Shown one piece after another: positions 8,951-46,060 of a stretch of DNA of 64,000 nucleotides (position 1 is the stretch's first letter; every line of letters begins with the position of its first letter). The notes beneath the pieces are model-generated. The model did not search any database. It was given only the letters and a program-made list of their open reading frames with translations, and was not told the DNA's origin. The position numbers were made by a program, and so were the translations under genes. This DNA is from Selaginella moellendorffii. Its lineage: Eukaryota > Plantae > Lycopodiophyta. The stretch covers positions 724,774 to 788,773 of the forward strand of contig NW_003314264.1 in NCBI RefSeq assembly GCF_000143415.4. The letters are read 5' to 3'.

Positions 8951-11900
8951 GCGTTTGTTTGCTTTGCAACATTTATTTTGTTCTGTTGATTATTGCTCGA
9001 GTTAGTTCTCATAGATTAGGATGTTATTTCCTTTGGGTGATACATTCGCGAGCATTGTGCTTGTTAGTCAATGATAATTTGTGTTCTTTGAGTTGTGTTT
9101 TGTGAGTTGTTTAGCATGCTATCTACCATTTTCGGTAGTTCAGTTTTATCATTGAGTTTACTTGATGATATACTTGCTATTGAATTTTGTTAGATGGTGA
9201 ATCCTATGTTTTCCAATGATAGTGGTCTTGGTGGTTCCTATACTATAATACTAGTTTATCGGATGATAACTTACTTGGAATACTATTGTGTTCTAATATA
9301 AGATTTAATCACTAATAATACGATCTTTGAGTTTGGGCCAGTATAGGCAGACTGGCTTCGGCACTTCGTGTGCATGTTGAAATCTCTAGTCATGGGATAA
9401 CTACTATCGACTGGTCATATCACCCGCCTCTCTGTCGATGTTCCTTATTCCGTGAAAGGGCGTGACCGTGTAAACAACTCTAACTGCCTGTTGATAGTAG
9501 TCTATCTAAACCTTACCGACGGGTTTGGTTTCTTTGCTCAGGAGGGTTGGGGCCTCTGGCTTCTCTCTCTATGTCCCTGCGGGCAGGGCATATCACACTT
9601 TTGTAAGCTGGGTGACTCCCAGAGTAGCAGGGAGTTACCTGTCGGCTAGTTACGGACACTCTTACCTTACTACCACGATGGTAGGAGGTCGGTATTGCTG
9701 GGCCCGTTATTAGTCTCTGCCTAAGCTAGTTGAGAAACTGGTCATCACATGTGCACTTAGACCAGAAGGGCACTAAGGAAGGAAATCCTAAGTTGTCATC
9801 TAGTCAAGCAGACTTGACACGGTGATGAGAAACTCATGATGTTGGCTTGCACTTGCTAGTGTTGGGAACCCCCGCGATATTGAGCTTGGTCCCTCAATAT
9901 TGCTAGATGATAGCTTACCGTGTCTGCCAAACACCCTCGCTATCATGCCCTTAGCATTAGTCTCAATTCGGTCCCAAATGCTATTTATGGAAAGTGTCCA
10001 GATTTGCTCATTTGGCATATCTACGGAATGTAGAGATCATCCTGAACACAATGGTGTTTGTCCCATGTCCAAATTCGCAATCTAGGGACATTCCATATTT
10101 AGTAAGTTTCGAGCTTGTCCCAAAGACTAACTCCTAATACTAAGGGAGGCTTGGGGTGAAAGCCCAAAGCGTGTGTTCCTCAAGGGGGGGGGGGGGGGAG
10201 GGGGGGCTATGGGGGGTTCCAAATGTATAGTAGGGATAGTGGGTAGGTTGGGTATGGCTAACCAACCTGAGGCATAGTTTAGCTCTCGCTTGCGTGCCTG
10301 TCCTTGTTCTGCATCCGGCTTGGGTCTAAGCCCAAGTTCCATTCCATGCTAGCTGGTGGAGTACCCATACTCTCACATTAGGCCACCGGTATGCCGAAAT
10401 AGCGCCAGACTCCGTTTGGCTCCGTTTTGCATGTTGGTCTTGGCATTGGGATGCTGGTTGCTTCAGGACTGTTCCAAGTCGCTCCAGGCCCCTGTCCCTT
10501 CGCTCATTGGGCTTTATGCTCGGGAGTTGCTCCGTGGTCCGGTTCCATCACTCCTTGGCTCCACGCTTGGGAGTTTGGCACCGTTCCTTCGTTCAGTGGC
10601 CCAAGGCCCTGAACCTCGGGTTCCTATGGACACGTGGCATGGACACGTGGCATGTGACACGTGGCATCTGTCACGTGGCACAAAGAGGGTTTAGGTTCCG
10701 CTTCGTGGTGTTATCCTATGGTAAATCACTATAGAAGCTCTATTTCGTTAAAGTGGGATTTATTCAGTAAAATGGGACTAGGTACAAATTTTCAAGTATT
10801 TGAAAATGACGTGAAATTATATGTTTTTTGTCCAGGGGCTAGACATATCTGGGGCGTGGTGACTAGCGCGGTGACTTTGTGTCCAGACTGAGTCCATCTG
10901 GTTGTATAATAAATGTCATTGTCAAGGTGAACAAGCCGAATCTGAAGCTAAAGAAGAGCGATGGCATGCGCGCACACACTATTTGTTTGTTCATTGAGCG
11001 TGTGGTGAGCTTTCCAAGATGAACGTCATTCCTATTAGCCAGACATATAACTTAATGGTGAGAACATTTAGATATTATTCAATGTTATCTTTTTCTAACG
11101 AATCTAATTGTGAAGGTGTAGCAAGAGGCATTGCTAGTCTGGAGAAGTCATTTAACTCATTTGACCCTTAGTGTATTTTCATGAAACTAAATAACATTCA
11201 TATTATTAAGGAAATTCTCTAGTACCTTTTTTTTACGACATAAAGGCTTGCATTTCTTTCAAAGGTGATTTAGTAAAAGGCCTGAGGGCACATGCCATTC
11301 TATTTCTCAGACCGGTATTAAGATATACTAGTGCAAAGGGAAAAAGGTATTTGGTGATCAAGTAAATGGCATGAGGGCACACGCCATTATAAGCCTAAGC
11401 ACTAGTGGACACCTCCTTTTTGGTACTCTCAGCGGTACTATCATCCTTCTCCGGGTCAGTTGTTTTGCTTTGGATTGTTGTCTCTGACGTTACTGGGGCG
11501 TTCTCGATAGTTGTTAATGTTGCCGTTTGTTCAGAAAAATGATCACCTGGAGTATAGTATGGGGAGTTTGGAAAACTTATATATTCTACATCTTCACCTA
11601 TTTCCTTCTCCGTCTCCTTTTCTGCCTCACTTACAGATTTTGTGATTGCCATGAGAACGCTCTTCACCCTAAAATATGGAGTTTGTTGTGTTATAAAAGG
11701 AAACCAACACACACGCTGCAAGGGAATGATGGTACATAAAGCACGTAAGCCCACAATATGGGTTTATGTGCCATTAATATGGGCCACACGCCATATTATT
11801 AGATTTATGCACGTGTGATTGGTAAATGCATATGTCACATCATCTTTGTTTTACCTCACACACTATATCAGGCCTAATGAACCATATCACATGTGCGCAC

Positions 11901-14342
11901 ATGCTATATATATGGAGAAGTATTATGCAAGGATAGAAAAATTCAATGCATGATTGTGGAGAGCAATGGCATGAAGCCACATGCTAAATAACATTTTAGA
12001 GAAAGAATTAAAATAGAAACATGCAAACAGTACTGAGTGGACCAAGACTTAGAAGTGCACAATTGAATGAGGTATTTCTAATAAATATTTCACTCACCTC
12101 ATATAGGAATGGCTACCACTCTCAAATGGCGTATCGCCTCATGCCATCACCTCGCAATTTGTTATAACAATCCGATGAATTCATATTCAACTTGTTCACC
12201 TTGAACTTTAAGTAAGATTTGCTAGAACAACTAAGAATTTATACTTGTTATTTGTATCATCTCACCTAGGAATGGCGTAAGGCCACATGCCATCACGCCT
12301 CCTCTGATTGCCTTGAAACATAAAATCTAGAAAGAAAATGACCTTTGTATGACCCAAAACAAAATCATGTTTTTCCTCAACAAGCTGAAAAAAAAATTGG
12401 AGATTCGGATTGTTCACCTTGAAATAAAATACATTAGAAACTTAGTAAAGGAATATTAATGAATCTCACCTTGAACCCAGGTTATGAATGCTCTTGCTGC
12501 ATCTCTTGCATGGTCTGGCAAGGTGATGGTGGCACTCTGCTTCCGCATCCAACCATGCACAACATTATCCACCGATATGCTCATGTTGGGATCCCTTGGA
12601 TTCAGCACCCATCTCTTTTCTAGGCAATCCTTCGTATATCCGGAACTTGGCTTGAACCACTCCACAGTTACATTGAAGGAGTTAGTTTCTGCGTCCTCCT
12701 CTGCATCAGTGATGCAGCGCCCCACCCATATCATTTGTTTTTTATTACTGGGTCTGACAAGCACGACCATTCCTTTGCAGACCTGTACTGGATTGAATGC
12801 TGAATCCGGCTTCTTGTTCCTCGGCCCACAATAGTGATCCTCAACATCGTTATCTGTCACTGCATTTCCAGAGGACATTGTTCCGCTACTATCTGGTGCT
12901 CTAGGTTCTGGCCAAAAGGACTCTTCCAATTCTTCATATACAACCGGCCCATTTTGGATAGCAGATATAATCTTCTCCCAGTATTCGAGCAAAGGCTTGC
13001 ACCTCTGAAAATAGGATTCTCCACCAAACACCAACCCCCTCTTCCAGAAGGCAATATGCTGTCTAATCCCGGCCACTATACTTTCCTGGTCTTTGAGTCC
13101 ATCCGGGTGCCGTGGGGAACCCTGAGGAATCATAGGTTCCCCAGTTATGGGATCTCTCTTGAAGAGTTCAATGCTGTCCACTGGCAGCCACACTGTGTCC
13201 CATTCTCTCATCTTGTACCTCATCACTGGAGCACCGTCACGCATGTTGAAATGAAACTGAAGAGGCTTGGAGTGGCCAATCAGCGTTTCGGATCCGTCCC
13301 TGATGTAGCCTCTTACAAACCCCTTAAAGTCTGGAACCTCTGTCACAACTGTAGCTTCAACAGTGCCTTTGATGCAATTTTGGAATTCATCGTAGAGTTG
13401 TGGGAGGGTGAGGACATTGGATCGCCAGAGGGACTCTGCCAGGTGACTGAACATGGCATCGACGTCTTCATGAGTGTGCCCAACCATGAGAAAGCCAAGT
13501 GTAACCGTTTCAAATATGCCTTTGGCAACAAGCATCGCCAAGTATGCGAAGACGTACATGTTTTTGTTCTCACTGCCAGCATTGTCTGTTTGGAGCAGAA
13601 GATGGGGTGGAAGGCCACATCGGCCGCAAGAACTTCCTTGAGATTCTACTTCGTTTGGATGAGGCTGTGCATTCACTGGGCAGTCAGCCTCGTCGGAATG
13701 GCATGAGGCCTCACGTGATAACCCTACAAGCTGACGGCCAACATATTCACTGGGATGGCATGGGGCCCCACGCGATACTGCAAGCCTTTGCTCCTCCTCC
13801 AGCTGAACCCTGTATGGGGTTCGACCGACAAGGGCCTTATGCAAGGGTTGGCCATTCAGCTCAGTCTGCGCACTTTGCAGAGACCTTAAGTGTTTTGCTA
13901 GGGACGCAATCATCATGTTTGCACCCTCGCCACCCCATAGAGGTACAAAGAAGTTCCCATAGTTTTGGGCACCATGCCCATGAGCGATTATGCCAAACAG
14001 AGACACAGGCAGCTGCATGGATGAAGAGATTGCCTTGGGGGCAGGATTGAGTCGAGGTAAGCACGTCTTTTTCTGGTCCATTTTGTCGTGGATGATGCAG
14101 AGGTAAGAGTCAGGTCTCTCCATGGAGAGAATCCTGTTATGATAATATGCAGTCCTGCAGCTTCTCTGCTCGATGTTGTGGTCGAGCCGCCTTCTAACCA
14201 ACGTCTCTCGCTCTTGAGCGCTGCAAGAATTCTTCGACAAAGCCATTTTGATAGCAGTGCACTCGTCACACTTTGAAAAGCTGGAGTACTTTCCTATACT
14301 CACATCCCTGAACCTGTTGCTCCACAATCTACTAAATCTAGA

Positions 14343-16118
14343 TGTAAGCGACTAATTTTTCCATTCTACTTTAGTCACTTAACCACACCTTTGACCACTT
14401 GAAGGAGTCTCACTCACAACCTCCTTAAGTCCAATTTAGGGCTTGGGACTTACTAGCTCCGAGAATGGCATCCATGCCACTCATCCCTTACACTTAGTCC
14501 AAGTGCTCCACGTGTCCGGTCCCAAGACCGACACCCCAAGGTACCACCGACATACTAGCCCGTTACGCTAAGGCCATGCCCCTTTACCTTGGTCATACCG
14601 GTGGTCTAACACCACCTGCATCACAATCCCTTCTCTCAAGGACTGGACCATCCGTCCATGAGTGATCATTCTAGATCCACTCCTTAGCATCCTTCGGATG
14701 CCCACAGACGTGTGGAATAGCCTTCCCCAATATCCCTTTTCTGGTCCCCACCAAGTCCCTTTCTGCCCATGGCCGTGTTCACCAACACTACCACTGGATC
14801 GAGGCCCACCGGCCCGACCATTAAGTCCCATGGTCCTCTGGGACTTCCTCACCACACAACTGTGTCCTTGGTCACAACCCCAGAGGACTGCTCCTCTTCC
14901 TTTCCACAGTCTGGGCCTTTGGGACAACATTTCGGAACACCGTGGCCTTACGCGAGCCACCTGGGTACTCTCCCCACCTTTCGCCTTTAGGTGCTCTAGC
15001 CATGGGCTTAGAGCGAGGTTCCGTTGAGCCACGCCTGGTATCCAAGTAAGTAGTGCCACCCACACTTGGACTGGGAGCATCAGCCAATCGGGGGAACTAC
15101 AGCCGGCTCTTGAACACTTCACCAAGCTACCCCGCTTGTCGGTCTGTATTCACTCTAGTTTTGGACTTCCTAGTGGTCAGTTCATCACCCAACACTGGGT
15201 CTGGCCTTCCCGGGCCAAACTGGCCTTTCCTGGCCAAACTGGCTCCATTGCAGTCCTCCCCCCCACTATACTTTTGGAGCTCACCAAACCCCCCAGGGTC
15301 TGGGAGACGAACGCTTTGGGCTTTCACCCTCTCAGACTCGGACTCGGACTCGGATTCGGACTCGGACTCGAACTTGGACTCGGACTCGGACTCGGACTCG
15401 GACTCGGACTCGGGCTCAGGCTCGGACTCAGCCTTGGGCTCGGGCTCGGGCTCGGTCCCAGTCTCGGTCCCGGTCTCGGTCCCGGTCTCGGTCCCAGTCT
15501 CGGTCTCGACCTCGGACTCCATCTCGGGTCCTTCTCAGACTCCATCTCGGACTCCATCTCGGGCTCCGTCTCGGTCCATCTCGGACTCCATCTCGGACTC
15601 CATCTCGGACTCCATCTCGGACTCCATCTCGGGTCCATCTCGGACTCCGTCTTGGTCCACCTCGGACTCCATCTCGAACTTCATCTCGGACTCCATCTCG
15701 GGTCCATCTCGAACTCCGTCTCGGTCCACCTCGGACTCTATCTCGGACTCCATCTCGGGTCCATCTTGGACTCCATCTTGGACTCCATCTCGGACTCCAT
15801 CTCGGGTCCATCTCGGACTCCGTCTCGGTCCACCTCGGACTCCACTTCGGGTCCATCTCGGATTCCATCTCGGGTCCATCTCGGACTCTTCCACATGTCA
15901 TGTGTTGGTCCTTTTGGGTCCCTTTTTGGAGCCTCGCTTATTGCTCGCTTTGTGCTTGTTCCTCAAGCACTTTGTTGGGAGTTCCACTCCCGCTCTCGAC
16001 CTTCCAAGTCGGAGCTTTTAGTCCAAACGGGTCACGCTCGTTTGGCTTTCACTTCAGCCACTACCACGTGGCACCCTTTCCAGCTCCACTTTGGGGCCTA
16101 GGGATTTTGTGTCTCACA
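14343..16118. mobile_element. Solo LTR inserted in the transposase gene
   Basis: TGTAAG...CTCACA termini and a 5-bp TSD CTAGA (14338-14342, 16119-16123). Copy 2 has a single CTAGA at the equivalent site (about 42538). Confidence 0.95.
15330..15890. repeat. Tandem (CTCGGA)n / (CTCCATCTCGGA)n minisatellite within the LTR
   Basis: Directly visible; related decayed arrays at about 2760-2975, 28480-29000 and 50262-50340. Confidence 0.95.
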
Positions 16119-19100
16119 CTAGATTGGCTCAGCTTCCTGTAGCCATTACTCTGGAGTTCCCGATTCACATCTTCCAATATGGCCCCCTTGGTATACATGG
16201 AAGGGAGAACTCGTTAGGTGTTTCGTGTTCCATCTTCCAAGAGGCGGGTTTTATGTGGTTGCTGCTCGCTACATGTCTCGACAAACCTCTTGAAGATTGC
16301 TTCTCCATATACAACATGACCCCTGGTTTTGTGCGTACCGTCGTTCCCATGGACTGCCTGTTGAACCCTTTGTTCCTTGAACTCAGTTTTGATTCTGTAG
16401 AATGTGGTTTGAGGGACTCCATAAATGATTCTCCATGCCTTCATGCAGACCAAACCCCTCTGGAAGACCATGCCCCCCACCTGATGTTCTGAAGCATCAA
16501 CAGATGACCGTAATGCCTCATACACAAAATTGCGAGCTGCCTTCCAGGACAATGTCTTGTATCTTGCTCTCTCCTCTTCAATAGCATCCCAATCAGCATG
16601 TTGACAGCACCTCCTCTTGCAACAAGCAATTGTCGAGACCATTCGAACCTCCATCGCCATTTTCTGCCTTTTCGGTTCGTTGCTCAGATCCCTTTGGCTG
16701 CGCTTTAGGAAGGTGTACTTTCTTTTCCCATGAAGAGATGTTCTATCATCAGTTGTAGTGGTGTTTGATTGTGAATCCTTCACATTCTCAAACACTAAGT
16801 GCCTCAATTTCCACCGCACAATGCTTCCAATAGTCAGACTGTTTTCTTCTGTGTCAACAACCTCTAAAATCGCAACTCCAATATCATCCCAGCCCAATTC
16901 TTGATTAGCAACCGCATCTCTTGGATCGACAACTGTGGCTAAGCCCTCAGCTACCACCTCCCCCTCGGGGTTGTTTAGAAACACCTTTGCCTGAATCCAT
17001 GTAACACGGTTCTTAAGATCCACGGAGGGAACATGCGTCGCACTTGCACTGTCCCCAACATCTGCTTTCTTCTGAAGATTTTTCAAGGCAACAACAACAT
17101 TTACCCGACAACCATCTCTCCTCGTTCAATAGCGACCACATTCCCATCGAAGACAGTCTCTACTGATATAGCAGCATTGCCTTCCCCAAGCCTTTGACAG
17201 TGTATAACAAAGTTCCGATCCATAGACACAAGGGTCCCTTTTGCAACTCTCTTCCCACCATTCAAAATGTAAACCTTTTCTCCAACCCTGAAGGCCATTC
17301 TGAAAGTGCAGAAAAGAAGTTAAGACCATACAAAACATGATTGGAGAATGGCCTAAATCATAACATACCAAACAACCTCAATAGCATGAGGCCACATGCC
17401 ATTATTCAAACATGCTATTGACACCCACGTGAAATTTCGCATTCACAAAATTGGCATGAGGCCTCATGCCATCTTGATATACACACAGCTGCAGGCAAGT
17501 AAAAACATACACGCTAGCCATGAAATTGCAAGGGCCCAAGATGGCATGTGGCCTCATGCCATTTCTAAATGTGGTCCTAAGCCATTCCATGGTGAACATA
17601 CCGAATATCAGTGCCGAATATCAAGAGGAAGCGGTAGCCACACCAAAGACAGTGCCGCTCGCAACACCGCAACTACTCGTAGCGCCGCTCGCAACATCGC
17701 AACTGCTCGTAGCACCGCTCGCACAAACTGCCACTTGCATAAACTGCCGCTCGCAATGGCGCTCGCAATGCCGCAACCGTTTGTAGACGCATAAACCACA
17801 GCTCACAACGTCGCTTACACAAGCAACGCTCACTGCGCTCAGCGGAACCAAGAACACGGCGCACAAAAATGATAGACCTAGGAATGAGTTCGAGAATTCA
17901 AAAATAACACACGCTTGAACGTCACATCAAATCCTCTGACAAACCAGATCTTATGATTCCTCTGACAAATTTCAAACTGAGTAGCTTCTAGACTTTGCTG
18001 TCGGACGTTGAACTTTGTCACATCATGTCCTTGCCTCGATCCAGCTGTGCCATATCAGTGATTCGAACTTTGCCATGCCGTGTTAGCGATCCGCGCCAAG
18101 ATTATTCGTCGTGTAAAGGAATAATTATGCTGTGTGTGTATGTCCATTTATGGCAATATAAGGCCACATGCCATTCAAAGAATAATGCTAGTCGAGCATT
18201 TTTTGGTGCATTTTTGAGTTCAAAATTGCATGCTATAAAGTTTACCTGTACCAAAAATAGAAACAGCTTTATTTACTTGGGAATTTAAGTGGTTGAGGCA
18301 TTTTTAAACTTACAAACACATGCCCTACTTACATTCCTTTGGTTGCTTAAAATTCAAAAATATTATAAACCTTTCTTTTTGCATTTTCAATGTTTTCAAT
18401 TATGGTTTTTGATTTTCGCAGGACCAGCCTAGTAATCTATTTGCATCTCGTCATGTTTATAGCTAGCTTTTGTTTGTCCCCTTCGCTAGCCTGAGATACA
18501 TCTGCTCGGCATCTGCCTCTTACAGCATTTGCCCAGAAAGGGCATCTTTCTTCACGTAGCATTTCCCACATGTTTAGGGTTTAGGGTTAGCAATTCAGTA
18601 GCTTGATAAACATGCAAATACAGAACTTGAGGCAAAATCCTTTGATATATCACAATGCCCCTAGGACCATAAACACATTTCAATAGAGAGGGTCCTTTCA
18701 TTTCATAACTCCTTACGTAGATCTTGGTGAAACCAGAGTTAGTGAAGTTAGTTTCTTGTGATCCCGCATCTGATTGTGATGTCCCTTTGCAGTGTCGATG
18801 GAAAGGTCAATGCACACCAAAGTGTAGAATCTTGGAGCAAAATAACGGTCGGATCTATGGCAAATGCCCCTGAAACATTGTAAGGCTCGTGTGGTCTCAT
18901 GTGGTGTCCGATCGAGATGCTTCTTTGTAGGTCATCAAGAAGGACATTGTATACCATTCTTTATTTAGCTGAACATCTGGCATTTTTGGAAATACAAGAT
19001 GCTTTGGAATATCCAATCATGCATGGTATAAATATAGCGAGGGTATTAAATGATATCCCAATCATGATCTTTCTTTTGGATTTCGCGTGCATGCAGTCCG

Positions 19101-35208: not shown

Positions 35209-35679
35209 GGAAAAGCTCTATTTCGTTAAAGTGGGAATTGTCATTATCCCACTTGTAGAATAAGGTTTCCAAACCTTTATATAGTATATAAATATAATAG
35301 AATTCAACTGCATTGAGGCACATGCCATTTTATTTTAAACAAGAAAATGTCTACTCAATCACTTCTCCTCCCCCTGCCACTGCTTCACCTCTCTCTTCTC
35401 CTTGTCATCGTCGTCCAATTTCTTTCCATCCTTTTAATATTGGCTCAGTTGCTCCGAGTCTAGGTGGAGCCCAAGTCCCCATTCAATCTTTACTTTCCCC
35501 TTATCAATAAAACAACTTCGTAGACTTCCAATAACATGCTGTAACACTTCTAGTATAATGCAAATCCTCTCAAAGAATTGTCTTTTAATATTAATACAAT
35601 GGCATGGAACCCCATGCCATAATAAGTTACATTTTTAAATAAATACATGCCATCTCAGACTGTTAGTTTTTTGCCTCCA

Positions 35680-38600
35680 ACGCCTATACAATAATTTTGG
35701 AATTTCATCACTCTCCACACTATCAGGATTTAAACCCAATAGTAATGCCATCTCTTCTCTAATACGTCCATGCTCATGTTCAGTGGTCGAAGAACCCATC
35801 CGGTTGAGCAGATTATGGAGATGCGGATAGTGCTTGGCTAGACAATATACATGCCATAAATGATGACTGGTGTTTGTCCGATCAAATGGCTTTTGATATA
35901 CCGTTCCATCTGCCATTTGGTTGATTTCTGCAGCCACCTCCTAGACTGGCCGGTTCTCTATCACCATCGCTCCAAGCTGTTTTGCAAGGTCCCCCAGAAC
36001 ATACCCTAGTTTCCATAGGGGTGCACTGCATATGTGTGCGTGTTCGCTGTAGTTTTAATCGGCGAGTCATCGATGATGAGGATTTCACTTGACCTAGCAG
36101 TCCGGTTCATCACTACAGCCTCTGGCTTGACGAAGATGGGCTTGCTACCCCTCACATGGACCATAGTCAAGCAATCCTCCTGCGTTAGGAGAAAGTCAAA
36201 TGGTAATATTACTCGCGTTTGATCGTGCATCATCTGTAGCAACGTTAATGCATTGTGGCGCATCATGGATGTCCAAACTCCCAATTGCAAATTGAACCCG
36301 GCCTTCTGTTTTAAGTGTCGCATGGTCATTATTAGATCCTGCAGTTTCTCCCGTGTGATTAATGTGAATCTGTCTCTTTTGACCAACTTGCGACCGCAGG
36401 CTTTGGAGAGTGCAGTGACATTCGAGGACAAGCCACGCTCATGGGAGAAAAGGACACTGTTCAGATCAAAAACGATACAGTACCTTCACCGTGACTCTGA
36501 AATGAAATGCGTCAGCATAAAAAATGGTACAAGTCAATTTTACCATCTACAATATTAGTGAATGGTGCTCCCGATGGTCGTTGAGAGGGTTTTGGTCGAG
36601 GAAACGTGAAGGCTGAAATACTCTCCTCTGCAATGTGGGGTCAATCGCATCCGATGGCGTGTGGGCACATGCCATTTCAGCTGTAGACTCTGGTACAACT
36701 GGCTTAACAGTGGCATGGGGTGGTTCCGATGGCGTGTGATCACACGCCATTTCAGCTGGTGCCTTCGTTGGCAAAGTGGACATGACCGAACAGGCAGCAG
36801 GGGCGGTGTAGGGAGGTTCCAACGGCGCGTAGTCAGACGATTGGGCACACGTTGAGTCTGTTGGATATGAGGATACGACCGGCTCGGCGGCTGGGGCGGC
36901 CTCATGCGGGTCCAATGGCGCCTGGTCACCATCAGTTGGATACGTGGACAAGATTAACTCAGTGGTATGGGCAGCATCAAGTGGAGCGTGGTCAGCTTGC
37001 TTGGCATTGATATGGATAGTAGCCTCCACCAGCTCTGATGACTCTTGCAGGCAAGTAGAGTGCATTGGCGGATCCATATGCATGTCCAAATATCTCCCTT
37101 CGATTGAGATGGTATCCTCCCATGCTACTAAAAACAAACTCATTAGCACATTGAATCAACTATACTATATTTACCATCAACTGCTATTGAGGAACTAGGA
37201 CCGATATCACTTGGGCGCACTGCTGATTCTGAAGGATTGGACATACGTTTCGACCTTTGCTTGGCACTATCCTTCCTCGACACTAAAGGCTAGAGTTTGT
37301 ATCTTAATTCAACTGAATAATCTCTACTTACCATTTGCTCTGCGACCTACATGGACAATGTTAGAAATGGTAGAAAGTTAGGAATGGATGTACTATTATT
37401 TACCTGATGGTTTGTCTTGTATGACCTTCCTCCGCTGCTCTTTAGCCACCTCAGGCTGGCCATCGTCATCATCATTGTCGTCATCGTTATTGTGATCGTC
37501 ACCATTGTGAGGACCATCAAAGTCCTCTTCGTCCTCCTCTTCTTCGTCCTCCTCTTCTTTGTCCTCCTCTTCGTCCTTCTGCTCTTCCTGCTCATTATCT
37601 TTCTCTGGCTCCTCATCCCCCTCCTGCATTTCTTCCATAGGCTGCTCAGGCTGGATGGCTTGTTCTTCCAGGACCATCTTGGGAAAATCATCTGGCCGAG
37701 TCTCCATCTCAAAATACAAGACATCCATAGCCTGTTTTAGTGTGTGACCTAGGACCGTATCCTCACCCGACTGTCTTAACATGGTTTCTGCACGTTCTTG
37801 CACCCTTCGAAGACGACGAGATGAGAAAAACGTGGCCCTGACTTGAAAAGCATCCCTCATCCATTGTACCTCTCCATTGAGATTGGGGAAGGGGAGTCCG
37901 CCATAGGAATCTGAGTCAGGAGGTGGTGACTGGCTGCTTTCACTCAGCCCTTGATCTGCAATGAATGGCATGAGCACACACGCCATAACCGCGAGGCATT
38001 ACCTATCATCTTTTCGTTGCCCTTCTTCCTTTTCGAATCAAAGGCCTCTGATCCCGACGACTGTCCAACGTGCTTTCGCTTTTTATGACCACTGTCAATT
38101 TGAGCTTGATCTGCAAGAAATGGCATGAGGACCCACGCAATAACCATGACGCTTTACTTCCCGTCCTTGGAGGCTCTGTCGTGCCTTCTGCATCCTCAGG
38201 TGCCTGCTCCTCAATTCCCTTTCTCTTTCGTTTCTTATGCGCCAGTTCTACAGAAATAGCATGAGGACATACGCGATAAGCACACAAATGCTTTTACCCT
38301 TCCTCCTCTGCCCTAGTCGGTTGTCCATCTCTTTGTCTACAGCGTCTGAAAGCTGTTTTGCAGGTAGCCTAATTCGAGGTTCATGACGTCTCCTTGGCAC
38401 TTGAACTGTATACTATTGCATCAACACATGCAACATCCCACAATATTTTTAAGTTACCTTTCATAAAGTTTTCCATTGGTTCAACTCGTTCCCCTGAAAT
38501 ACAAACTTAGATAAGTGCATGGGGCCATATGTCATGATCGTACCTGTTTCGGAACTCTCCTTATCACTCTCCAAGGCCTCCCCCTCCTCCACTGGAGGCA

Positions 38601-40996
38601 CGTTGTTCCGTTCGATTTCCTCGACTCGATCTGCAAGAACATTAGTTAATTGCGTGGGGCCACACGCCATCAAACCTTCAGGTTCTTGTCGTGAGGTCTG
38701 CACTACTTGCCCTAGTCTCTTTGGAATTTGAGCTGCAAGAAGCAATGGCATGAGAATTCACGTATAACAAAAATGATTGGTACCTCTTGTCCGTTGTACT
38801 TGGCTGGTGCTTGCCTGTTTTGCCTTTGAAGAAGTGTCTCCTGCAAGGAATGGCATGAGACCACACGCCATTGCAAATATAATTTGTACCTCCTTTTTTC
38901 CTATTGCTTGTCTGTTTGTCCTTCTTCGATGCGCCACCAGTGCGCTTTTCAGTCCTCGTGTCTGAATATTCACAACGATCTATAATCAAAATGGCATGAG
39001 GCCTCACGTGACCTTACCTTGTGCAGGTTGTGAGCTCGGCCCAACATGGGTATCTTCAACAGTAGCTGTTAACGCCGTTTCAGCATCTGGGGGTGGCCAC
39101 GCTCCTACATACAGAGCTTGTGAGATAACATTTAAACTTAAAGTGCGTACTCACCAGGTTCGCAGAGAAGATACTGTTTTTCTTTGGCAACTGTAATTAT
39201 ATGCTCCATTGAAGTCACCTCTTCAATGGAGTTTGTCACCGCAACACACAGGACACCCTTGAGTAGTGCGGCTCGAAAGAATAATCCGCCGCAATTGTAC
39301 TCGACAACGCATTTGCCCTTGGAGTCGGAAGCAGGTGACCCACCCGCTATTGCGTTGAAGACCCAGCTGAGCATTTCCCATGCTGCACCTGGAGCTTTCT
39401 TTGGATTCGAAAGTTCCATAGCCGTCTTCAGTTCCTCAAGCACGGGTAAATTGACTTCCCTCAGATCAATTCGATCGGTCTTGTCGAACGAAGCTGGGAA
39501 GTCACTCCAGTCCCACTCTGCTGCAGGACCAATAACAAGGGTGAGTGTGAAGATGCGGACATTCGTCGGTATCTTCTTCTTAGCCATTATCCCATGGATC
39601 TCCCGCATCTCCTTGCCTTTCAACCAAGCCTTCACCTCGTTCAAGGCCTTCTAGAACTTGTGATAGGATTCGAACTCGTAGATCATATAGTGGACTGAAG
39701 ATTCCACCTCCGCAAGTCCCACCATTAAGTCAATGATGGAGCTGACTTTGTCTGCATGAGTGATCTCCTCGTTTGTGAAGTCCATCACACAAAAGATGTT
39801 CTTGACCTGCTCATCTCCACGGGAAACGATGCTCCTCCACCTTTGATCCTCATCTGAATTCACGTATACCCGGTAAGGTTCTCGATAGGCCTCTGCTGCG
39901 GGGTCGAGCTGTTTCTGAAGCTGGCGGTCGACATCCCTCTTAATGAAATTTGGATACTGATCCAACTTCTCAGCTTTACTTTTCGTGGCATCCCGCAGCA
40001 GATCGATGAACTTGGGGGCCCCTGTCACGTACTTGTCGATGTCTTCATTTGACAACTCCAGCTCTTCCATCATCTCTTGCGTGGTGTCGATGCTCACCCT
40101 CTCCATGGCCACTTGCTTGAAGATCCAATCCTTCAATAGCGCACGAGCTCTCAGAGTCGTGCACAAGTCCTCGTATGTCACAATATGGCCAGGAGTCATT
40201 TTGGTCTTGTTGAAAACTACCTCACCACGTAGAAGAGCATTAGCCACTGTCAGAAGGTCGTTGTTATCTAGAGACCGCGAGAAACGCAAGGTGTTGAGCT
40301 TCAAATCATTGGGCTTCCGGCCGTCCTCCACACCGATTGAGTTTAGCAACTCCCTGTCATGGTACCTCCTTAGCACATCTACCCATTTGTCAAAAACAAC
40401 TTTTGTCGCGAGTAGAATGTTATGGATGCTGAGTGTGTCATTGACCCCTAGTGTTTTCGAGAGAAGACTCAAGAATTCCTGCAATGGAAATGGCGTGAGG
40501 CCGCATGCTATGCCACATGCAACGAGGCTTACCTGCCAGGCACTAGTTGCTAGTGCACGTCCTTGTCCTAGTTTTTGTGGCTTCTTCAGTTGAACCCAGA
40601 GCTTCCGTGTTCGTGCCAATGTCTCGTGCAGACCCGATTTGTAGCACGTTTCTTGCTTGACATTCTGCGCGTGGGAGATGTATATGATAGATCGGAGGGG
40701 CGAGTTGCCTTTTATCAGGTGGACAACTCTTGTCTTGAAGACTTTCTTCACCTCCTCACCCACCATAATATCCACAACTATCTCTTGCATCGCCAAGCTA
40801 GAATGCTGCCCGGAGACGGCATAGAACCGGATGTTCTGATCGTCCAACACCTTCCTATTGATCAAGTCTGGAAACCTCGTCTCGCCCTTCATTGTTCGGT
40901 AGTAGGGGATCACGTCTGCGATGTCGGGTGTTACTGGACTTCCCAGCATCTTCTACTTCAGTTTCTCCACCCACTCATCAGATACTAGCCTGTGGT
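35680..40996 (-). pseudogene. Transposon cargo gene, copy 2 (5'-truncated; retains the MTase-like C-terminus and micro-exon array)
   Basis: ORFs 39651-40949, 39138-39644, 37396-37986 and 36006-36431 are colinear with copy 1. Ten consecutive phase-1 GT-AG introns lie between 39154 and 37956. Confidence 0.78.
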
Positions 40997-41603
40997 ACGA
41001 CAGCAAAGTCTAGAAGCTACTCAGTTTGAAATTTGTCAGAGGAATCATAAGATCTGGTTTGTCAGAGGATTTGATGTGACGTTCAAGCGTGTGTTATTTT
41101 TGAATTCTCGAACTCATTCCTAGGTCTATCATTTTTGTGCGCCGTGTTCTTGGTTCCGCTAAGCGCAGTGAGCGCTGCTTGTGTAAGCGGCGTTGTGAGC
41201 TGTGGTTTATGCATCTATGAGCGGTTGCGGCATTGCGAGCGCCATTGCGAGCGGCAGTTTATGCGAGTGGCAGTTTGTGCGAGCGGCACTACGAGCAGTT
41301 GCGGTGGTGCGAGCGGCGCTACGGTACCACTAATGGTATGAGGGCTCATGCCATCTTGGGGCTTGCAAGTTCATCACTAGCATATTGCCAATAGTTTCTT
41401 TACTTGCCTATAGCTGTGTGTTTATCAAGATGGCATGAGGCCTCATGCCAATTTTGTGAATGCGAAATTTCACGTGGGTGTCAATAGCATATTTGAATAA
41501 TGGCATATGGCCTCATGCTATTGAGGTTGTTTGGTATGTTATGATTTAGGCCATTCTCCAATCATTTTTTGTATGGTCTTAACTTCTTTTCTGCACTTTC
41601 AGA

Positions 41604-44429
41604 ATGGCCTCCGCAAGTGCGACGCATGTTCCCTCCGTGGATCTTAAGAACCGTGCTACATGGATTCAGGCAAAGGTGTTTCTAAACAACCCCGAGGGGG
41701 AGGTGGTAGCTGAGGGCTTAGCCACAGTTGTCGATCCAAGAGATGCGGTTGCTAATCAAGAATTGGGCTACGATGATATTGGAGTTGCGATTTTAGAGGT
41801 TGTTGACACAGAAGAAAACAGTCTGACTATTAGAAGCATTGTGCGGTGGAAATTGAGGCACTTAGTGTTTGAGAATGTGAAGGATTCACACTCAAACACC
41901 ACTACAACTGATGACAGAACATCTCTTCATGGGAAAAGAAAGTACACCTTCCTAAAGCGCAGCCAAAGGGATCTGAGCAACAAACCGAAAAGGCAGAAAA
42001 TGGCGATGGAGGTTCGAATTGTCTCGACAGTTGCTTGTTGCAAGAGGAGGTGCTGTCAACATGCTGATTGGGATGCTATTGAAGAGGAGAGAGCAAGATA
42101 CAAGACATTGTCCTAGAAGGCAACTCGCAATTTTGTGTATGAGGCATTACGGTCATCTGTTGATGCTTCAGAACATCAGGTGGGGGGGATGGTCTTCCAG
42201 AGGGGTTTGGTCTACATGAAGGCATGGAGAATCATTTATGGAGTCCCTCAAACCACATTCTACAGAATCAAAACTAAGTTCGAGGAACAAAGGGTTCAAC
42301 AGGCAGTCCATGGGAACAACGGTACTCACAAAACCAGGGGTCATGTTGTATATGGAGAGGCAATCTTCAAGAGGTTTGTCGAGACATGTAGCGAGCAGCA
42401 ACCACATAAAACCCGCCTCTTGGAAGATGGAACTCGAGACACCCAACAAGTTCTCCCTTCCATGTATACCAAGGGGGCCATATTGGAAGATGTGAATCGG
42501 GAACTCCAGAGTAATGGCTACAAGAAGCTGAGCCAATCTAGATTTAGTAGATTGTGGAGCAACAGGTTCAGGGATGTGAGTATAGGAAAGTACTCCAGCT
42601 TTTCAAAGTGTGACGAGTGCATTGCTATCAAAATGGCTTTGTCGAAGAATTCTTGCATCGCTCAAGAGTGAGAGACGTTGGTTAGAAGGCGGCTCGACCA
42701 CAACATCGAGCAGAGAAGCTGCAGGACTGCATATTATCATAACAAGATTCTCTCCATGGAGAGACCTGACTCTTACCTCTGCATCATCCACGACAAAATG
42801 GACCAGAAAAAGACGTGCTTACCTCGACTCAATCCTGCCCCCAAGGCAATCTCTTCATCCATGCAGCTGCCTATGTCTCTGTTTGGCATAATCGCTCATG
42901 GGCATGGTGCCCAGAACTATGGGAACTTCTTTGTACCTCTATGGGGTGGCGGGGGTGCAAACATGATGATTGCGTCCCTAGCAAAACACTTAAGGTCTCT
43001 GCAAAGTGCGCAGACTGAGCTGAATGGCCAACCCTTGCATAAGGCCCTTGTCAATCGAACCCCATACAGGGTTCAGCTGGAGGAGGAGGAAAGGCTTGCA
43101 GTATTGCATGGGGCCCCATGCCATCCCAGTGAATATGTTGGCCGTCAGATTGTAGAGTTATTAGGTGAGGCCTCATGCCATTCCGACGAGGCTGGTCACC
43201 CGGTGAATGCACAGCCTCATCCAAACAAAGCAGAATCTCAAGGAAGTTCTTGCGGCCGATGTGGCCTTCCACCCCATCTTCTGCTCCAAACAGACAATGC
43301 TGGCAGTGAGAACAAAAACATGTACGTCTTCGCGTACTTGGCGATGCTTGTTGCCAAAGGCATATTTGAAACGGTTACACTTGGCTTTCTCATGGTTGGG
43401 CACACTCATGAAGACGTCGATGCCATGTTCAGTCACCTGGCAGAGTCCCTCCGGCGATCCAATGTCCTCACCCTCCTACAACTCTACGATGAATTCCAAA
43501 ATTGCATCAAAGGCACTGTTGAAGCTGCACTTGTGACAGAGGTTCCAGACTTTAAGGGGTTTGTAAGAGGCTACATTAGAAACGGATTTGAAACGCTGTT
43601 TGGCCACTCCAAGCCTCTTCAGTTTCATTTCAGCATGCGTGACGATGCCCCAATGATGAGGTACAAGATGAGAGAATGGGACACAGTGTGGCTGCCAGTG
43701 GACGGCATTGAACTCTTCAAGAGAGATCCCATAACTGGGGAACCTATGATTCCTTAGGGTTCCCCACGGCCGATGCACCCGGATGGACTCAAAGACCAGG
43801 AAAGTATAGTGGCCGGGATTAGACAGCATATTGCCTTCTGGAAGAGGGGGTTGGTGTTTGGTGGAGAATCCTATTTTCAGAGGTGCAAGCCTTTGCTCGA
43901 ATACTGGGAGAAGATTATATCTGCTATCCAAAATGGGCCGGTTGTATATGAAGAATTGGAAGAGTCCTTTTGGCCAGAACCCAGAGCACCAGATAGTAGC
44001 AGAACAATGTCCTCTGGAAATGCAGTGACAAATAACGATGTTGAGGATTACTATTGTGGGCCGAGGAACAAGAAGCTGGATTCAGCATTCAATCCAGTAC
44101 AGGTTTGCAAAGGAATGGTCGTGCTTGTCAGACCCAGTAATAAAAAACAAATGATATAGGTGGGGCGCTGCATCACTGATGCAGAGGAGGACGCGGAAAC
44201 TAACTCCTTCAATGTAACTGTGGAGTGGTTCAAGCCAAGTTCCGGATATATGAAGGATTGCCTAGAAAAGAGATGGGTGCTGAATCCAAGGGATCCCAAT
44301 ATGAGCATATCGGTGGATAATGTTGTGCATGGTTGGATGTGGAAGCAGAGTGCCACCATCACCTTGCCAGACCATGCAAGAGATGCAGCAAGAGCATTCA
44401 TAACCCGGGTTCAAGGTGAGATTCATTAA
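41604..44429 (+). pseudogene. Sola-like transposase, copy 2 (in-frame stops at about 42114, 42669, 43755 and 44157)
   Basis: Same catalytic motifs as copy 1. The stops correspond to TGG, CGA or CAG codons in copy 1. Confidence 0.87.
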
Positions 44430-46060
44430 TATTCCTTTACTAAGTTTCTAATGTATTTTATTTCAAGGTGAACAATCCGAATCTGAATCAGAGGAGGCGT
44501 GATGGCATGTGGCCTTACGCCATTCCTAGGTGAGATGATACAAATAACAAGTATAAATTCTTAGTTGTTCTAGCAAATCTTACTTAAAGTTCAAGGTGAA
44601 CAAGCCAAATATGAATTCATCGGATTGTTATAACAAATTGCGAGGTGATGGCATGAGGCAATACGCCATTTGAGAGTGGTAGCCATTCCTATATGAGGTG
44701 AGTGAAATATTTATTAGAAATACCTCATTCAATTGTGCACTTCTAAGTCTTGGTCCACTCAGTACTGTTTGCATGTTTCTATTTTAATTCTTTCTCTAAA
44801 ATGTTATTTAGCATGTGGCTTCATGCCATTGCTCTCCACAATCATGCATTGAATTTTTCTATCCTTGCATAATACTTCTCCATATATATAGCATGTGCGC
44901 ACATGTGATATGGTTCATTAGGCCTGATATAGTGTGTGAGGTAAAACAAAGATGATGTGACATATGCATTTACCAATCACACGTGCATAAATCTAATAAT
45001 ATGGCGTGTGGCCCATATTAATGGCACATAAACCCATATTGTGGGCTTACGTGCTTTATGTACCATCATTCCCTTGCAGCGTGTGTGTTGGTTTCCTTTT
45101 ATAACACAACGAACTCCATATTTTAGGGTGAAGAGCGTTCTCATGGCAAGCACAAAATCTGTAAGTGAGGCAGAAAAGGAGATGGAGAAGGAGATAGGTG
45201 AAGATGTAGAATATATAAGTCTTCCAAACTCCCCGTACTATACTCCAGGTGATCATTTTTCTGAACAAACGGCAACATTAACAACTATCGAGAACGCCCT
45301 AGTAACGTCAAAGACAACAATCCAAAGCAAAACAACTGACCCGGAGAAGGATGATAGTACCGCTGAGAGTACCAAAAAGGAGGTGTCCACTAGCGCTTAG
45401 GCTTATAATGGCGTGTGCCCTCATGCCATTTACTTGATCACCAAATACCTTTTTCCCTTTGCACTAGTATATCTTAATACCGGTCTGAGAAATAGAATGG
45501 CATGTGCCCTCAGGCCTTTTACTAAATCACCTTTGAAATAAATGCAAGCCTCTATGTCGTAAAAAAAAGGTACTAGAGAAATTCCTTAATAACATGAATG
45601 TTATTTAGTTTCATGAAAATACACTAAGGGTCAAATGAGTTAAATGACTTCTCCAGACTAGCAATGCCTCTTGCTACACCTTCACAATTAGATTCGTTAG
45701 AAAAAGATAACATTGAATAATATCTAAATGTTCTCACCATTAAGTTATATGTCTGGCTAATAGGAATGACGTTCATCTTGGAAAGCTCACCACACGCTCA
45801 ATGAACAAATAGTGTGTGTGCGCATGCCATCGCTCTTCTTTAGCTTCAGATTCGGCTTGTTCACCTTGACAATGAGATTTATTATACAACCAAATGGACT
45901 CAGTCTGGACACAAAGTCACCGTGCTAGTCACCATGCCCTAGATATGTCTAGCCCCTGGACAAAAAACATATAATTTCACGTCATTTTTAAATACTTGAA
46001 AATTTGTACCTAGTCCCATTTTACTGAATAAATCCCACTTTAACGAAATAGAGCTTGGAA

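What the first reader, a model, noticed from the sequence alone, without database searches (positions are those of the whole stretch)
10735..46056. Giant Sola-like plant transposon carrying a ParB-like/MTase-like/HAD cargo gene and its own palindromic sites: candidate transposon-encoded self-recognition or anti-silencing system
Seen: two copies with identical 24-bp TIRs and different 4-bp TSDs, a transposase gene, a divergent multi-exon cargo gene, and a 22-bp palindrome found throughout both copies but, by eye, nowhere else in the window. Known: bacterial ParB binds palindromic parS sites; ParB-MTase fusions occur in phages and other mobile elements; Arabidopsis VANDAL elements encode VANC proteins that bind motifs accumulated in their own introns and non-coding regions to escape methylation. 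Inference: the cargo protein (or the transposase) recognises the palindrome in cis and alters chromatin or DNA modification across the element. I know of no description of this combination.
Basis: partly seen in the sequence, partly recalled or inferred. Interest (0 to 1): 0.93.

Follow-up and report, generated by a model that had tools for sequence, protein, structure and literature searches.

The report
Sola1 transposon with accessory gene, palindromes
Two decayed copies of a 14-kb plant Sola1 DNA transposon each carry a second large gene and about 20 copies of an element-specific 22-base palindrome; liverwort transposons share this three-part design, which suggests, but does not show, that the element encodes a protein that recognises its own DNA.

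Summary
Copy A (10735-24749) and copy B (35213-46056, inverted) are about 97% identical. They share one 24-bp TIR and have separate 4-bp TSDs (ATAG, GGAA). All 41 matches to the 22-bp palindrome lie inside the copies (0.04 expected).

The transposase is Sola1-type: Pfam DUF7869, and a core motif matching the published Ectocarpus Sola1-1_Ec32 transposase. The divergent accessory gene ends in a NIF/FCP1 HAD-like domain that passes Pfam's threshold. Its middle part is homologous to liverwort proteins, and a model of one of those matches beta-class N6A/N4C DNA methylases. The catalytic motif is not DPPY. The ParB-like claim stays inconclusive.

Both copies are dead. Their substitutions are dominated by CpG-type transitions, which gives no sign of escape from methylation.

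New here: Riccia and Calypogeia elements carry the same transposase, accessory gene and palindromes, with a different palindrome in each lineage.

Not new: a Sola1 element with a ParB-like/methylase gene on the opposite strand (Ectocarpus, 2025), and ParB-like accessory genes beside inverted-repeat arrays (red algae, 2025).

Best reading: the palindromes are binding sites for an element-encoded protein, probably the accessory protein. Transposase binding is not excluded. I rate it a new variant of a known kind.

The parts
10735..24749 (+). Copy A of the Sola1 element (14,015 bp), transposase-side end on the left
   Evidence: TIRs and ATAG TSDs read; aligned to copy B
35213..46056 (-). Copy B of the same element (10,844 bp), inverted relative to A
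   Evidence: TIRs and GGAA TSDs read; aligned to copy A
10735..10758 (+). 24-bp TIR, copy A left end (TSD ATAG at 10731-10734)
24726..24749 (-). 24-bp TIR, copy A right end (TSD ATAG at 24750-24753)
35213..35236 (+). 24-bp TIR, copy B accessory-gene-side end (TSD GGAA at 35209-35212)
46033..46056 (-). 24-bp TIR, copy B transposase-side end (TSD GGAA at 46057-46060)
12456..17298 (-). Sola1-type transposase gene of copy A (DUF7869 core), split by a nested solo LTR
   Evidence: Pfam E 3e-43; tblastn of P0065; motif match to Sola1-1_Ec32
14344..16118 (.). Nested solo LTR (TG...CA, 5-bp TSD CTAGA) that disrupts the copy A transposase; not part of the element proper
41610..44429 (+). Transposase gene of copy B, one frame with in-frame stop codons
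19850..24283 (+). Accessory gene of copy A. Contains the N-terminal ORF, ParB-like part, helical part and N-terminal half of the MTase-like domain. A 1.6-kb deletion at 22033/22034 is followed by an acidic region, a Pro-rich region and the NIF domain.
35638..40994 (-). Accessory gene of copy B; the 5' part is lost to a 2.6-kb deletion, and it retains the MTase C-terminal half and its intron
20525..21028 (+). ParB-like region of copy A (conserved YAVSGQHSS motif), interrupted by a TAG at 20627-20629
   Evidence: homology to Riccia P0181 runs across the stop; alignment A3; DNA read
40545..40994 (-). ParB-like region of copy B, with the same TAG at 40953-40955
39141..39960 (-). MTase-like domain of copy B. 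Motif IV position reads DFTN and motif I reads VVEYNCGG. TGG is replaced by a stop at 39651-39653.
   Evidence: fold supported only through the Riccia homologue
23456..24283 (+). NIF/FCP1-type HAD-like domain of copy A (motif FDLNG, not DxDxT)
   Evidence: Pfam PF03031, 23.4 bits against cut-off 21.8
36009..36485 (-). NIF/FCP1-type HAD-like domain of copy B
   Evidence: Pfam PF03031, 27.7 bits against cut-off 21.8
10961..12293 (.). 7 palindromes in the transposase-side subterminal region of A; orthologous set in B at 44502-45830
13698..13776 (.). 2 palindromes inside the transposase reading frame or linker of A; B orthologues at 43103-43181
17381..17562 (.). 3 palindromes between the divergent genes in A; B orthologues at 41333-41521
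19657..19815 (.). 3 palindromes just upstream of the first accessory-gene ORF; this segment is deleted in B
21070..21091 (.). Single palindrome in the accessory gene of A; B orthologue at 40490-40511
37965..39012 (.). 6 palindromes in the non-coding stretch (inferred intron) that splits the MTase-like domain; present only in B
23189..23285 (.). 2 palindromes in the Pro-rich linker or intron before the NIF domain in A; B orthologues at 36654-36750
24342..24363 (.). Palindrome about 400 bp from the accessory-gene-side end of A; B orthologue at 35599-35620

Best explanation
These are two independently inserted, now defective copies of a roughly 14-kb Sola1-superfamily cut-and-paste transposon from a plant-like genome.

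Shown here:
1. A Sola1-type transposase gene.
2. On the other strand, one long accessory gene. In order it encodes an N-terminal module with a conserved strand-SGQHS-helix motif (possibly ParB/Srx-like), a helical module, a beta-class N6A/N4C-methylase-like domain with a non-canonical catalytic loop, acidic and Pro-rich linkers, and a NIF/FCP1-type HAD-like domain.
3. About 25 copies, in the undeleted ancestor, of an element-specific 22-bp dyad-symmetric motif (half-site ATGGCRTG, 6-bp centre). They lie in the transposase-side subterminal 1.5 kb, the divergent promoter region, and the non-coding or linker parts of both genes.
4. The same three-part design in liverwort elements, with a different palindrome in each lineage.

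Inferred:
- The palindromes are operator-like sites for a dimeric, sequence-specific DNA-binding protein encoded by the element.
- The accessory protein is the most likely binder, in the manner of KorB or Noc on dispersed sites, or of Spm TnpA and VANDAL VANC on their own motifs.
- It would bring its methylase-like and phosphatase-like modules to the element's own chromatin or transcription machinery.
- The transposase would recognise the separate terminal motif TAAAGTGGGA.

I cannot say whether the effect is anti-silencing, self-repression or help with transposition. Both enzyme-like domains may be catalytically inactive.
For: - Architecture, TIRs and TSDs.
- Palindrome enrichment: 41 hits against 0.04 expected, none outside the copies. 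Half-sites are conserved at 38-41 of 41 while positions 9 and 14 vary.
- Sola1 assignment: DUF7869. The window core LQTDNAGSENKN...TVTLGFLMVGHTHEDVDAMFS matches QVDNTVAENKN...TVTLCFMMVGHTHIQIDQIFS of Sola1-1_Ec32.
- NIF domain above the Pfam cut-off in both copies.
- Accessory-gene homologues: Riccia has more than 110. Full-length ones of 1265-1367 aa combine all modules in one protein.
- Methylase fold: the AF2 model of Riccia P0071 matches M.RsrI (E 4e-8), CcrM, M.PvuII and the rotifer N4CMT.
- Same divergent layout in Riccia loci L001, L004 and L005.
- Palindromes in related loci: 29-48 per Riccia locus against 2-5 in shuffles, with at least three sequence types. In Calypogeia L002, 12 copies of a 14-bp palindrome against 0.15 expected, all inside the accessory gene, with no transposase within 10 kb upstream or 6 kb downstream.
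- The palindrome is unrelated to the TIR. A separate motif, TAAAGTGGGA, is doubled within 45 bp of the ends.
- Published parallels.
Against: - No binding data exist.
- The ParB-like assignment failed every profile test run here. The window protein's model is low-confidence there and has no PDB match.
- The MTase motif IV position reads DFTN in the window and D[LV]THP in Riccia, not (D/N/S)PP(Y/F/W). The HAD motif reads DLN in the window and DVE in Riccia, not DxD.
- Riccia loci L008 (left part) and L009 have transposase and palindromes but no detectable accessory gene, even at E<=1.
- An amphioxus DUF7869 gene lies beside a 27-copy palindrome array with no accessory gene.
- Differences between A and B are mostly transitions (193 against 43), 76 of them CpG-type. 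CpG o/e is 0.62-0.67 inside against 0.64 outside, so these copies were methylated like their surroundings.
- Both copies share a TAG inside the ParB-like region, so their common source may already have lacked a full-length accessory protein.
Confidence: 0.5

Rival explanations
1. The palindromes are transposase-binding sites (subterminal and internal enhancer-like sites for transpososome assembly). The accessory protein acts on something else.
For: - The densest cluster (7 sites) lies in the transposase-side subterminal 1.5 kb.
- Riccia L008-left and L009 carry transposase and palindromes but no accessory gene.
- The amphioxus DUF7869 locus L006 has a 27-copy array of a 14-bp palindrome beside the gene and no accessory gene.
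Against: - The palindrome shares nothing with the TIR, and another motif (TAAAGTGGGA) marks the termini.
- Sites are spread over the whole 14 kb, including inferred introns of both genes, which end recognition does not require.
- In Calypogeia L002 the palindromes lie only within the accessory gene, and no transposase is within reach.
- Copies without the accessory gene can be served in trans.
- The amphioxus array has not been shown to belong to a transposon.
Confidence: 0.3
2. The palindromes have no dedicated protein partner. They are hairpin- or cruciform-forming repeats that spread inside the element by slippage or mini-insertions, or they act as small-RNA sources.
For: - Many occur in short arrays of 60-100-bp period.
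- They decay at their CpGs like ordinary methylated DNA; only 26 of 82 half-site CpGs are retained.
Against: - The 22-bp dyad form is kept across several Riccia lineages and the window while the sequence changes. Within a lineage the half-sites are nearly invariant but the centre and flanks are not. This is the signature of a co-evolving dimeric binder.
Confidence: 0.1
3. The accessory gene is a passively captured host gene (Pack-type cargo) with no role for the element.
For: - Selaginella has a related gene (P0055) among ordinary host genes, with no palindromes.
- The catalytic motifs look degenerate.
Against: - The linkage with the Sola1 transposase, in the same divergent layout, is kept at 22-40% protein identity between the window species and Riccia, and Riccia has more than 110 copies.
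- An analogous gene sits opposite the transposase in Ectocarpus Sola1-1_Ec32.
Confidence: 0.1

Closest known systems
Sola1-1_Ec32 of Ectocarpus (Genome Biol 2025, PMC12477816)
   Same: Giant Sola1 element with 4-bp TSDs. [quoted passage not shown] The transposase core motif matches the window's.
   Different: Brown alga rather than a plant lineage; 21.5 kb; 282-bp imperfect TIR with AACCG termini. The passages I read mention no HAD/NIF domain and no dispersed palindromes. Direct homology of the two accessory proteins was not tested, because the Ectocarpus accessory sequence was not among the supplementary passages I retrieved.
Plavaka (EnSpm) elements of red algae with PAG2/PAG3 (Petroll et al. 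2025, bioRxiv 10.1101/2025.02.11.637652)
   Same: Giant DNA transposons carrying a PF01555 methylase (PAG2) and a ParB-like protein (PAG3), with arrays of inverted repeats next to PAG3. The authors propose that the protein binds and modifies its own element.
   Different: Different transposase superfamily. The domains are split over separate genes and joined to SET or 2OG-oxygenase domains rather than to a NIF phosphatase. The repeats form tandem arrays beside one gene, not sites dispersed across the whole element.
VANDAL21 / VANC (Arabidopsis Mutator-like elements)
   Same: An accessory protein encoded by the element, and short motifs accumulated in its own non-coding regions. This resemblance is from my own knowledge and from the summary.
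   Different: MULE transposase; VANC is unrelated in sequence; the motifs are not long palindromes. The exhaustive protein search found no relative outside bryophytes, Selaginella and environmental data.
Bacterial ParB family on dispersed palindromes (KorB-OB on RK2, Noc-NBS, ParB-parS)
   Same: Many copies of a 13-22-bp palindrome spread over one replicon, bound by a dimeric protein encoded by that replicon (from my own knowledge). This is the working analogy.
   Different: Membership is not shown. No ParBc, HTH or PDB-profile hit; SGQHS replaces GxxR or DGQHR; no ParA partner is present.
En/Spm TnpA and its 12-bp subterminal motifs
   Same: A two-protein logic: one protein for the TIR, and another for repeated internal or subterminal motifs that also affects the element's methylation state (from my own knowledge).
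   Different: CACTA superfamily, unrelated proteins, and motifs confined to the subterminal regions.

Membership tests
Sola1 superfamily of DNA transposons | 4-bp target site duplication | tested here: met
   ATAG/ATAG around A and GGAA/GGAA around B. The literature gives 4-bp TSDs for Sola.
Sola1 superfamily of DNA transposons | Sola1-type transposase catalytic core | tested here: met
   Pfam DUF7869, E 3e-43. By eye, about 25 of 55 residues are identical over the ...DN..ENKN...TVTL.F.MVGHTH...D..FS block of the published Sola1-1_Ec32 transposase. No formal phylogeny against Repbase was possible.
Sola1 superfamily of DNA transposons | Terminal inverted repeats | tested here: met
   Identical 24-bp TIR at all four ends.
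ParB/Srx superfamily (ParB, KorB, Noc, DndB) | Recognisable ParB/Srx N-terminal domain with a GxxR or DGQHR-type motif | tested here: inconclusive
   No Pfam, NCBIfam or PDB-profile hit for 15 family members. AF2 pLDDT is below 50 in the window protein. A nearly invariant [IV]SGQHS motif sits between a strand and a helix. One phage 'ParB/Sulfiredoxin' protein is among the BFVD hits of the Riccia model, but the RMSD is high.
ParB/Srx superfamily (ParB, KorB, Noc, DndB) | Cognate palindromic sites in several copies on the same replicon | tested here: met
   41 sites confined to the two copies, with lineage-specific palindromes in Riccia and Calypogeia. Binding itself was not tested.
ParB/Srx superfamily (ParB, KorB, Noc, DndB) | ParA-type ATPase partner | tested here: not met
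   No ATPase family among the element ORFs scanned against Pfam.
Beta-class N6A/N4C DNA methyltransferases (PF01555) | Methyltransferase fold | tested here: inconclusive
   Met for the Riccia homologue P0071: Foldseek gives M.RsrI at 4e-8, plus CcrM and M.PvuII. For the window protein the evidence is only homology and alignment of the motif-I region. Its own pieces have no Pfam or PDB hit.
Beta-class N6A/N4C DNA methyltransferases (PF01555) | Catalytic motif IV (D/N/S)PP(Y/F/W) | tested here: not met
   Judged by position, the site reads DFTN in the window and D[LV]THP in Riccia. This placement rests on the strand position in the Riccia model and on reading the window sequence by eye; one search did not align the window there.
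Beta-class N6A/N4C DNA methyltransferases (PF01555) | SAM-binding motif I (FxGxG) and Pfam gathering score | tested here: inconclusive
   VVEYNCGG in the window and VLDFFSGG in Riccia. The best Pfam scores, 15-23 bits in Riccia, are below the 26.7-bit cut-off.
NIF/FCP1/SCP HAD phosphatases (PF03031) | Pfam family score above the gathering cut-off | tested here: met
   23.4 bits (A) and 27.7 bits (B) against 21.8. Riccia relatives reach 54 bits.
NIF/FCP1/SCP HAD phosphatases (PF03031) | Catalytic DxDx(T/V) motif | tested here: not met
   The window has FDLNG(V/S) in both copies and Riccia has LDVEGL. The domain may be a pseudo-phosphatase.
Sola1 with a ParB-MTase accessory gene (Ectocarpus type) | Accessory gene on the strand opposite the transposase, encoding a DNA-binding module and a PF01555-like module | tested here: met
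   Layout shown; published description. Sequence homology to the Ectocarpus accessory protein was not tested.
VANDAL/VANC anti-silencing system | MULE transposase and a VANC-family protein | tested here: not met
   The transposase is DUF7869/Sola1. The exhaustive search with the accessory ORF found only four relatives, none from Brassicaceae.

The most novel reading that the evidence does not exclude
Land-plant Sola1 elements encode a self-recognition system. A ParB-like module of the accessory protein loads at element-specific 22-bp palindromes and covers the element. It either writes an unusual DNA mark (6mA or 4mC at the palindrome core) or tethers a CTD-phosphatase-like domain that changes how polymerases and the silencing machinery treat the element. 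Palindrome and protein co-evolve, so that co-resident lineages (at least three in Riccia) form separate specificity groups, much like plasmid incompatibility groups.
Probability: 0.25. Interest if true: 0.85.

Novelty: new variant of a known kind. Interest (0 to 1): 0.68.

Why it matters
Very few transposons are known to carry a protein that recognises their own DNA; VANDAL/VANC and Spm TnpA are the classic cases. In 2025, algal genome papers proposed that ParB-like/methylase accessory genes of giant transposons do this, but they gave no test.

This window and the liverwort loci offer a system in which that idea can be tested:
- a single fused protein (DNA-binding-like, methylase-like, phosphatase-like);
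- a clear, countable 22-bp site;
- natural specificity variants within one genome (Riccia), which allow swap experiments.

The finding also extends the Sola1/accessory-gene association from brown algae to land plants and adds an FCP1-type domain. That points to transcription-coupled control rather than DNA modification alone.

Tried and rejected
- Pfam on all large element ORFs found only DUF7869 and NIF.
- phmmer of the accessory pieces and of Riccia P0058 against PDB sequences gave nothing useful. A profile of the ParB-like region against PDB gave no hit at E<=10.
- Pfam and NCBIfam on 15 ParB-like regions gave only chance hits.
- The AF2 model of the window's 432-aa ORF was low-confidence at the N-terminus and confident in the helical middle. 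Foldseek against PDB found no match (best E 0.27).
- tblastn of the Riccia MTase region against the phage collection found no match.
- The exhaustive protein search with the accessory ORF returned only four distant relatives, so the host genome's own proteins are not in the library and the host species stays unidentified.
- The last word-index profile search returned only Riccia proteins.
- P0040 (Exaiptasia) could not be located, and the P0005 contig had no DNA available.
- The original Sola paper (Bao et al. 2009) is not held. The machine-read alignment figure of the Sola2 transposases was unusable.
- Rejected: one 35-kb composite element, because each copy has its own matching TSD.
- Rejected: the stop between the N-terminal ORF and the ParB-like part marks a gene boundary. 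Homology to Riccia P0181 runs across it.


Full report
**1. The observation**

A repeat scan shows long inverted matches between 10.7-24.7 kb and 35.2-46.1 kb. BLAST resolves these into seven collinear blocks at 91-98% identity. Reading the four ends gives the same 24-bp terminal inverted repeat, AAGCTCTATTTCGTTAAAGTGGGA, at 10735, 24749, 35213 and 46056. Copy A is flanked by ATAG on both sides and copy B by GGAA on both sides.

These are therefore two separate insertions of one family, in opposite orientation. The DNA between them is unrelated, and copy B sits inside a Ty3/Gypsy pol gene.

The 22-bp palindrome was recovered de novo by the repeat finder (family D10). Searched as ATGGCRTGNGNNCNCAYGCCAT with up to three mismatches, it has 41 matches against 0.04 expected. 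There are 19 in A, 22 in B and none in the remaining 39 kb. The outer eight bases of each half-site are nearly invariant (38-41 of 41). Positions 9 and 14 and the flanks vary.

**2. State of the two copies**

Neither copy is intact.

Copy A:
- A 1,775-bp solo LTR (TG...CA, TSD CTAGA) sits inside the transposase.
- The accessory gene has a frameshift near 21010.
- A 1.6-kb deletion at 22033/22034 removes the C-terminal half of the methylase-like domain, together with a non-coding stretch holding six palindromes.

Copy B:
- A 2.6-kb deletion removes the 5' part of the accessory gene and three palindromes.
- A TGG has become a stop at 39651-39653.
- The transposase carries several in-frame stops.

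Both copies share a TAG (A 20627-20629, B 40953-40955). Homology to the Riccia protein P0181 runs straight across it, so the stop interrupts a coding domain and predates the split of A and B.

A and B differ at 2.57% of sites. There are 193 transitions against 43 transversions, and 76 of the transitions are of the CpG type. CpG observed/expected is 0.67 and 0.62 in the copies against 0.64 in the rest of the window. These copies have decayed as ordinary methylated DNA.

A third, internally deleted copy exists in a public read assembly (L010).

**3. The transposase**

The 623-aa ORF of A matches Pfam DUF7869 (E 3e-43). Its relatives are unnamed proteins from liverworts (Riccia, Calypogeia), a sea anemone and amphioxus.

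The supplementary protein library of the Ectocarpus TE paper contains the Sola1-1_Ec32 transposase. Its block QVDNTVAENKNNYLMGILAAMVGRGIMRTVTLCFMMVGHTHIQIDQIFS lines up with the window's LQTDNAGSENKNMYVFAYLAMLVAKGIFETVTLGFLMVGHTHEDVDAMFS. An upstream CxxC...K motif also matches. That element has 4-bp TSDs, and its best Repbase match is Sola1-1_PPa from a moss.

Together with the 4-bp TSDs here, I file the element under Sola1. A formal tree was not possible.

**4. The accessory gene**

The gene runs away from the transposase. Stop-free segments conserved in both copies and homologues allow a domain order to be read.

(a) N-terminal module. The most conserved feature is [IV]SGQHS(S), between a predicted strand and a helix. 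It is preceded by a V..I.V..I...(x)...FDE..V..L stretch. The order recalls the ParB/Srx domain and the DGQHR motif of DndB; that comparison is from my own knowledge. However, Pfam, NCBIfam and a profile search of PDB sequences gave nothing. The AF2 model of the window ORF is below pLDDT 50 in this part. I score 'ParB-like' as inconclusive.

(b) Helical module. It is modelled with confidence (pLDDT 75-94) but has no PDB match.

(c) Methylase-like domain. The window pieces have no Pfam or PDB hit of their own. They are homologous to Riccia proteins. The AF2 model of Riccia P0071 matches beta-class N6A/N4C DNA methylases: M.RsrI at 4e-8, CcrM, M.PvuII, M.BceJIV and the bdelloid N4CMT. It also matches pandoravirus and phage N4C methylases. 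In the alignment the window keeps the motif-I region (VVEYNCGG...AALL against VLDFFSGG...EALL). By position, the motif IV site reads DFTN in the window and D[LV]THP in Riccia rather than DPPY, so activity is doubtful.

(d) Acidic and Pro-rich stretches.

(e) NIF/FCP1-type HAD-like domain. It scores above Pfam's gathering cut-off in both copies (23.4 and 27.7 bits against 21.8). Its first motif is DLN, not DxD.

**5. Related elements**

Riccia sorocarpa has more than 110 predicted proteins of this family. The longest (P0181 at 1265 aa, P0184 at 1367 aa) join all modules in one protein, with NIF at 52-54 bits.

In three Riccia loci the accessory gene and a DUF7869 transposase lie back to back, as in the window (L001, L004, L005).

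These loci are also full of 22-bp palindromes: 29-48 per locus against 2-5 in shuffled sequence. The sequences differ from the window's:
- TCWTSGGGACGCGTCCCSWAGA in L001 and L004;
- GCTTCGCGAYGCRTCGCGAAGC in L005 and L007;
- TGTTGGMACGNNCGTKCCAACA in the left part of L008.

As in the window, they lie in the subterminal region, between the genes, and in the gaps between coding segments of both genes (one search compared).

In Calypogeia L002 the same three accessory modules are present. A 14-bp palindrome, TYGCCTCGAGGCRA, occurs 12 times (0.15 expected), only within that gene, and no transposase is in the locus.

A Selaginella relative (P0055) has only the middle and methylase-like parts. It lies among host genes with no palindromes.

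**6. Who binds the palindromes?**

The constant 22-bp dyad form in the window and the Riccia lineages, with changing sequence, points to a co-evolving dimeric binder encoded by the element.

For the accessory protein:
- The palindrome is unrelated to the TIR.
- A different motif (TAAAGTGGGA) is doubled in the terminal 45 bp.
- The sites cover the whole element rather than only the ends.
- In Calypogeia the sites lie within the accessory gene.

For the transposase:
- L009 and the left part of L008 have transposase and palindromes but no trace of the accessory gene, even at E<=1.
- An amphioxus DUF7869 gene lies beside 27 tandem GCTGGAATTCCAGC palindromes with no accessory gene.

Copies without the accessory gene could be served in trans, so neither side is decisive. 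I put the accessory-protein model at about 0.5, the transposase model at 0.3, and the remaining rivals at 0.1 each.

**7. Comparison with what is known**

The combination is not undescribed.
- The Ectocarpus TE study reports a 21.5-kb Sola1 element with a 1104-aa ParB-like/DNA-methylase gene on the strand opposite the transposase. It suggests a class of accessory proteins that bind and modify their own element.
- The Bostrychia genome paper reports Plavaka elements with a PF01555-SET protein and a ParB-like/2OG-oxygenase protein next to arrays of inverted repeats, and makes the same proposal.
- Iyer et al. noted ParB-HTH-Dam fusions in chlorophytes and chytrids.

As far as I could find, the following are new here:
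- the land-plant occurrence;
- the fusion with a NIF/FCP1 domain;
- the dispersal of the sites over the whole element;
- the lineage-specific turnover of the palindrome, with several types in one genome.

**8. Verdict**

The element is a Sola1 member. The accessory gene is a new variant of a recently recognised kind. The self-recognition mechanism is plausible and now testable, but it is not shown. An anti-silencing role gets no support from these two dead copies.

Noticed in passing
window 14344-16118; also 2738-2983, 28473-29206, 49306-50508: A solo LTR (TG...CA, TSD CTAGA) is nested in the copy A transposase. Related LTR-like DNA rich in 12- and 23-bp tandem repeats occurs at three other places in the window.
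   Followed up: partly
window 32738-35217 (minus strand) and beyond 46057: Copy B is inserted into a Ty3/Gypsy pol gene; RNase H and integrase zinc-finger ORFs are on the minus strand.
   Followed up: partly
window 3865-4698 and 9650-10495: Direct repeats at 96-98% identity, 5.8 kb apart. They are probably the LTR pair of a retrotransposon that ends just left of copy A.
   Followed up: no
window 26316-31216: Six to seven dispersed copies of a 120-185-bp repeat (families D7, D9, D11), with one more relative at 3169-3229. Nature unknown.
   Followed up: no
window 10749-10777, 24706-24735, 35227-35236, 46014-46042: The motif TAAAGTGGGA occurs in the TIR and again within 45 bp at three of the four element ends (once at the fourth); 7 of its 9 window matches are there. 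It is a candidate transposase site distinct from the palindrome.
   Followed up: partly
L008:2076-7874 (Riccia sorocarpa): A third Riccia palindrome type, TGTTGGMACGNNCGTKCCAACA, occurs 14 times upstream of a transposase, with no accessory-gene remnant. From memory, it resembles the bacterial parS consensus TGTTNCACGTGAAACA.
   Followed up: partly
L006:23243-24200 (Branchiostoma lanceolatum): 27 copies of the 14-bp palindrome GCTGGAATTCCAGC in a tandem array lie just 3' of a DUF7869 gene, and no accessory gene was detected. It is not shown that the array belongs to a transposon.
   Followed up: no
L003:10001-11425 (Selaginella moellendorffii, P0055): A relative holding only the helical and methylase-like parts sits among ordinary host genes (ArfGap, VQ), with no transposase or palindromes. 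It may be a domesticated gene.
   Followed up: no
window 20630-20635 / 40947-40952; alignment A3 column M49: A methionine directly after the shared TAG is nearly invariant across the family. Gene callers in Riccia and Calypogeia used it as a start codon. It could be an internal start that gives a protein lacking the first strand of the N-terminal module.
   Followed up: no
palindrome cores in window, L001, L002, L004, L005, L006: The centres of the palindromes are classic 4-6-bp restriction-type sites: GGCC, ACGCGT, ATGCAT, CTCGAG and GAATTC. These would be natural targets if the methylase-like domain is active.
   Followed up: no
L001:19317-20798 and L004:22042-22912: A peroxidase gene lies a few kb from two different Riccia copies, on different sides of the element. 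This may be coincidence or part of a larger repeated unit.
   Followed up: no
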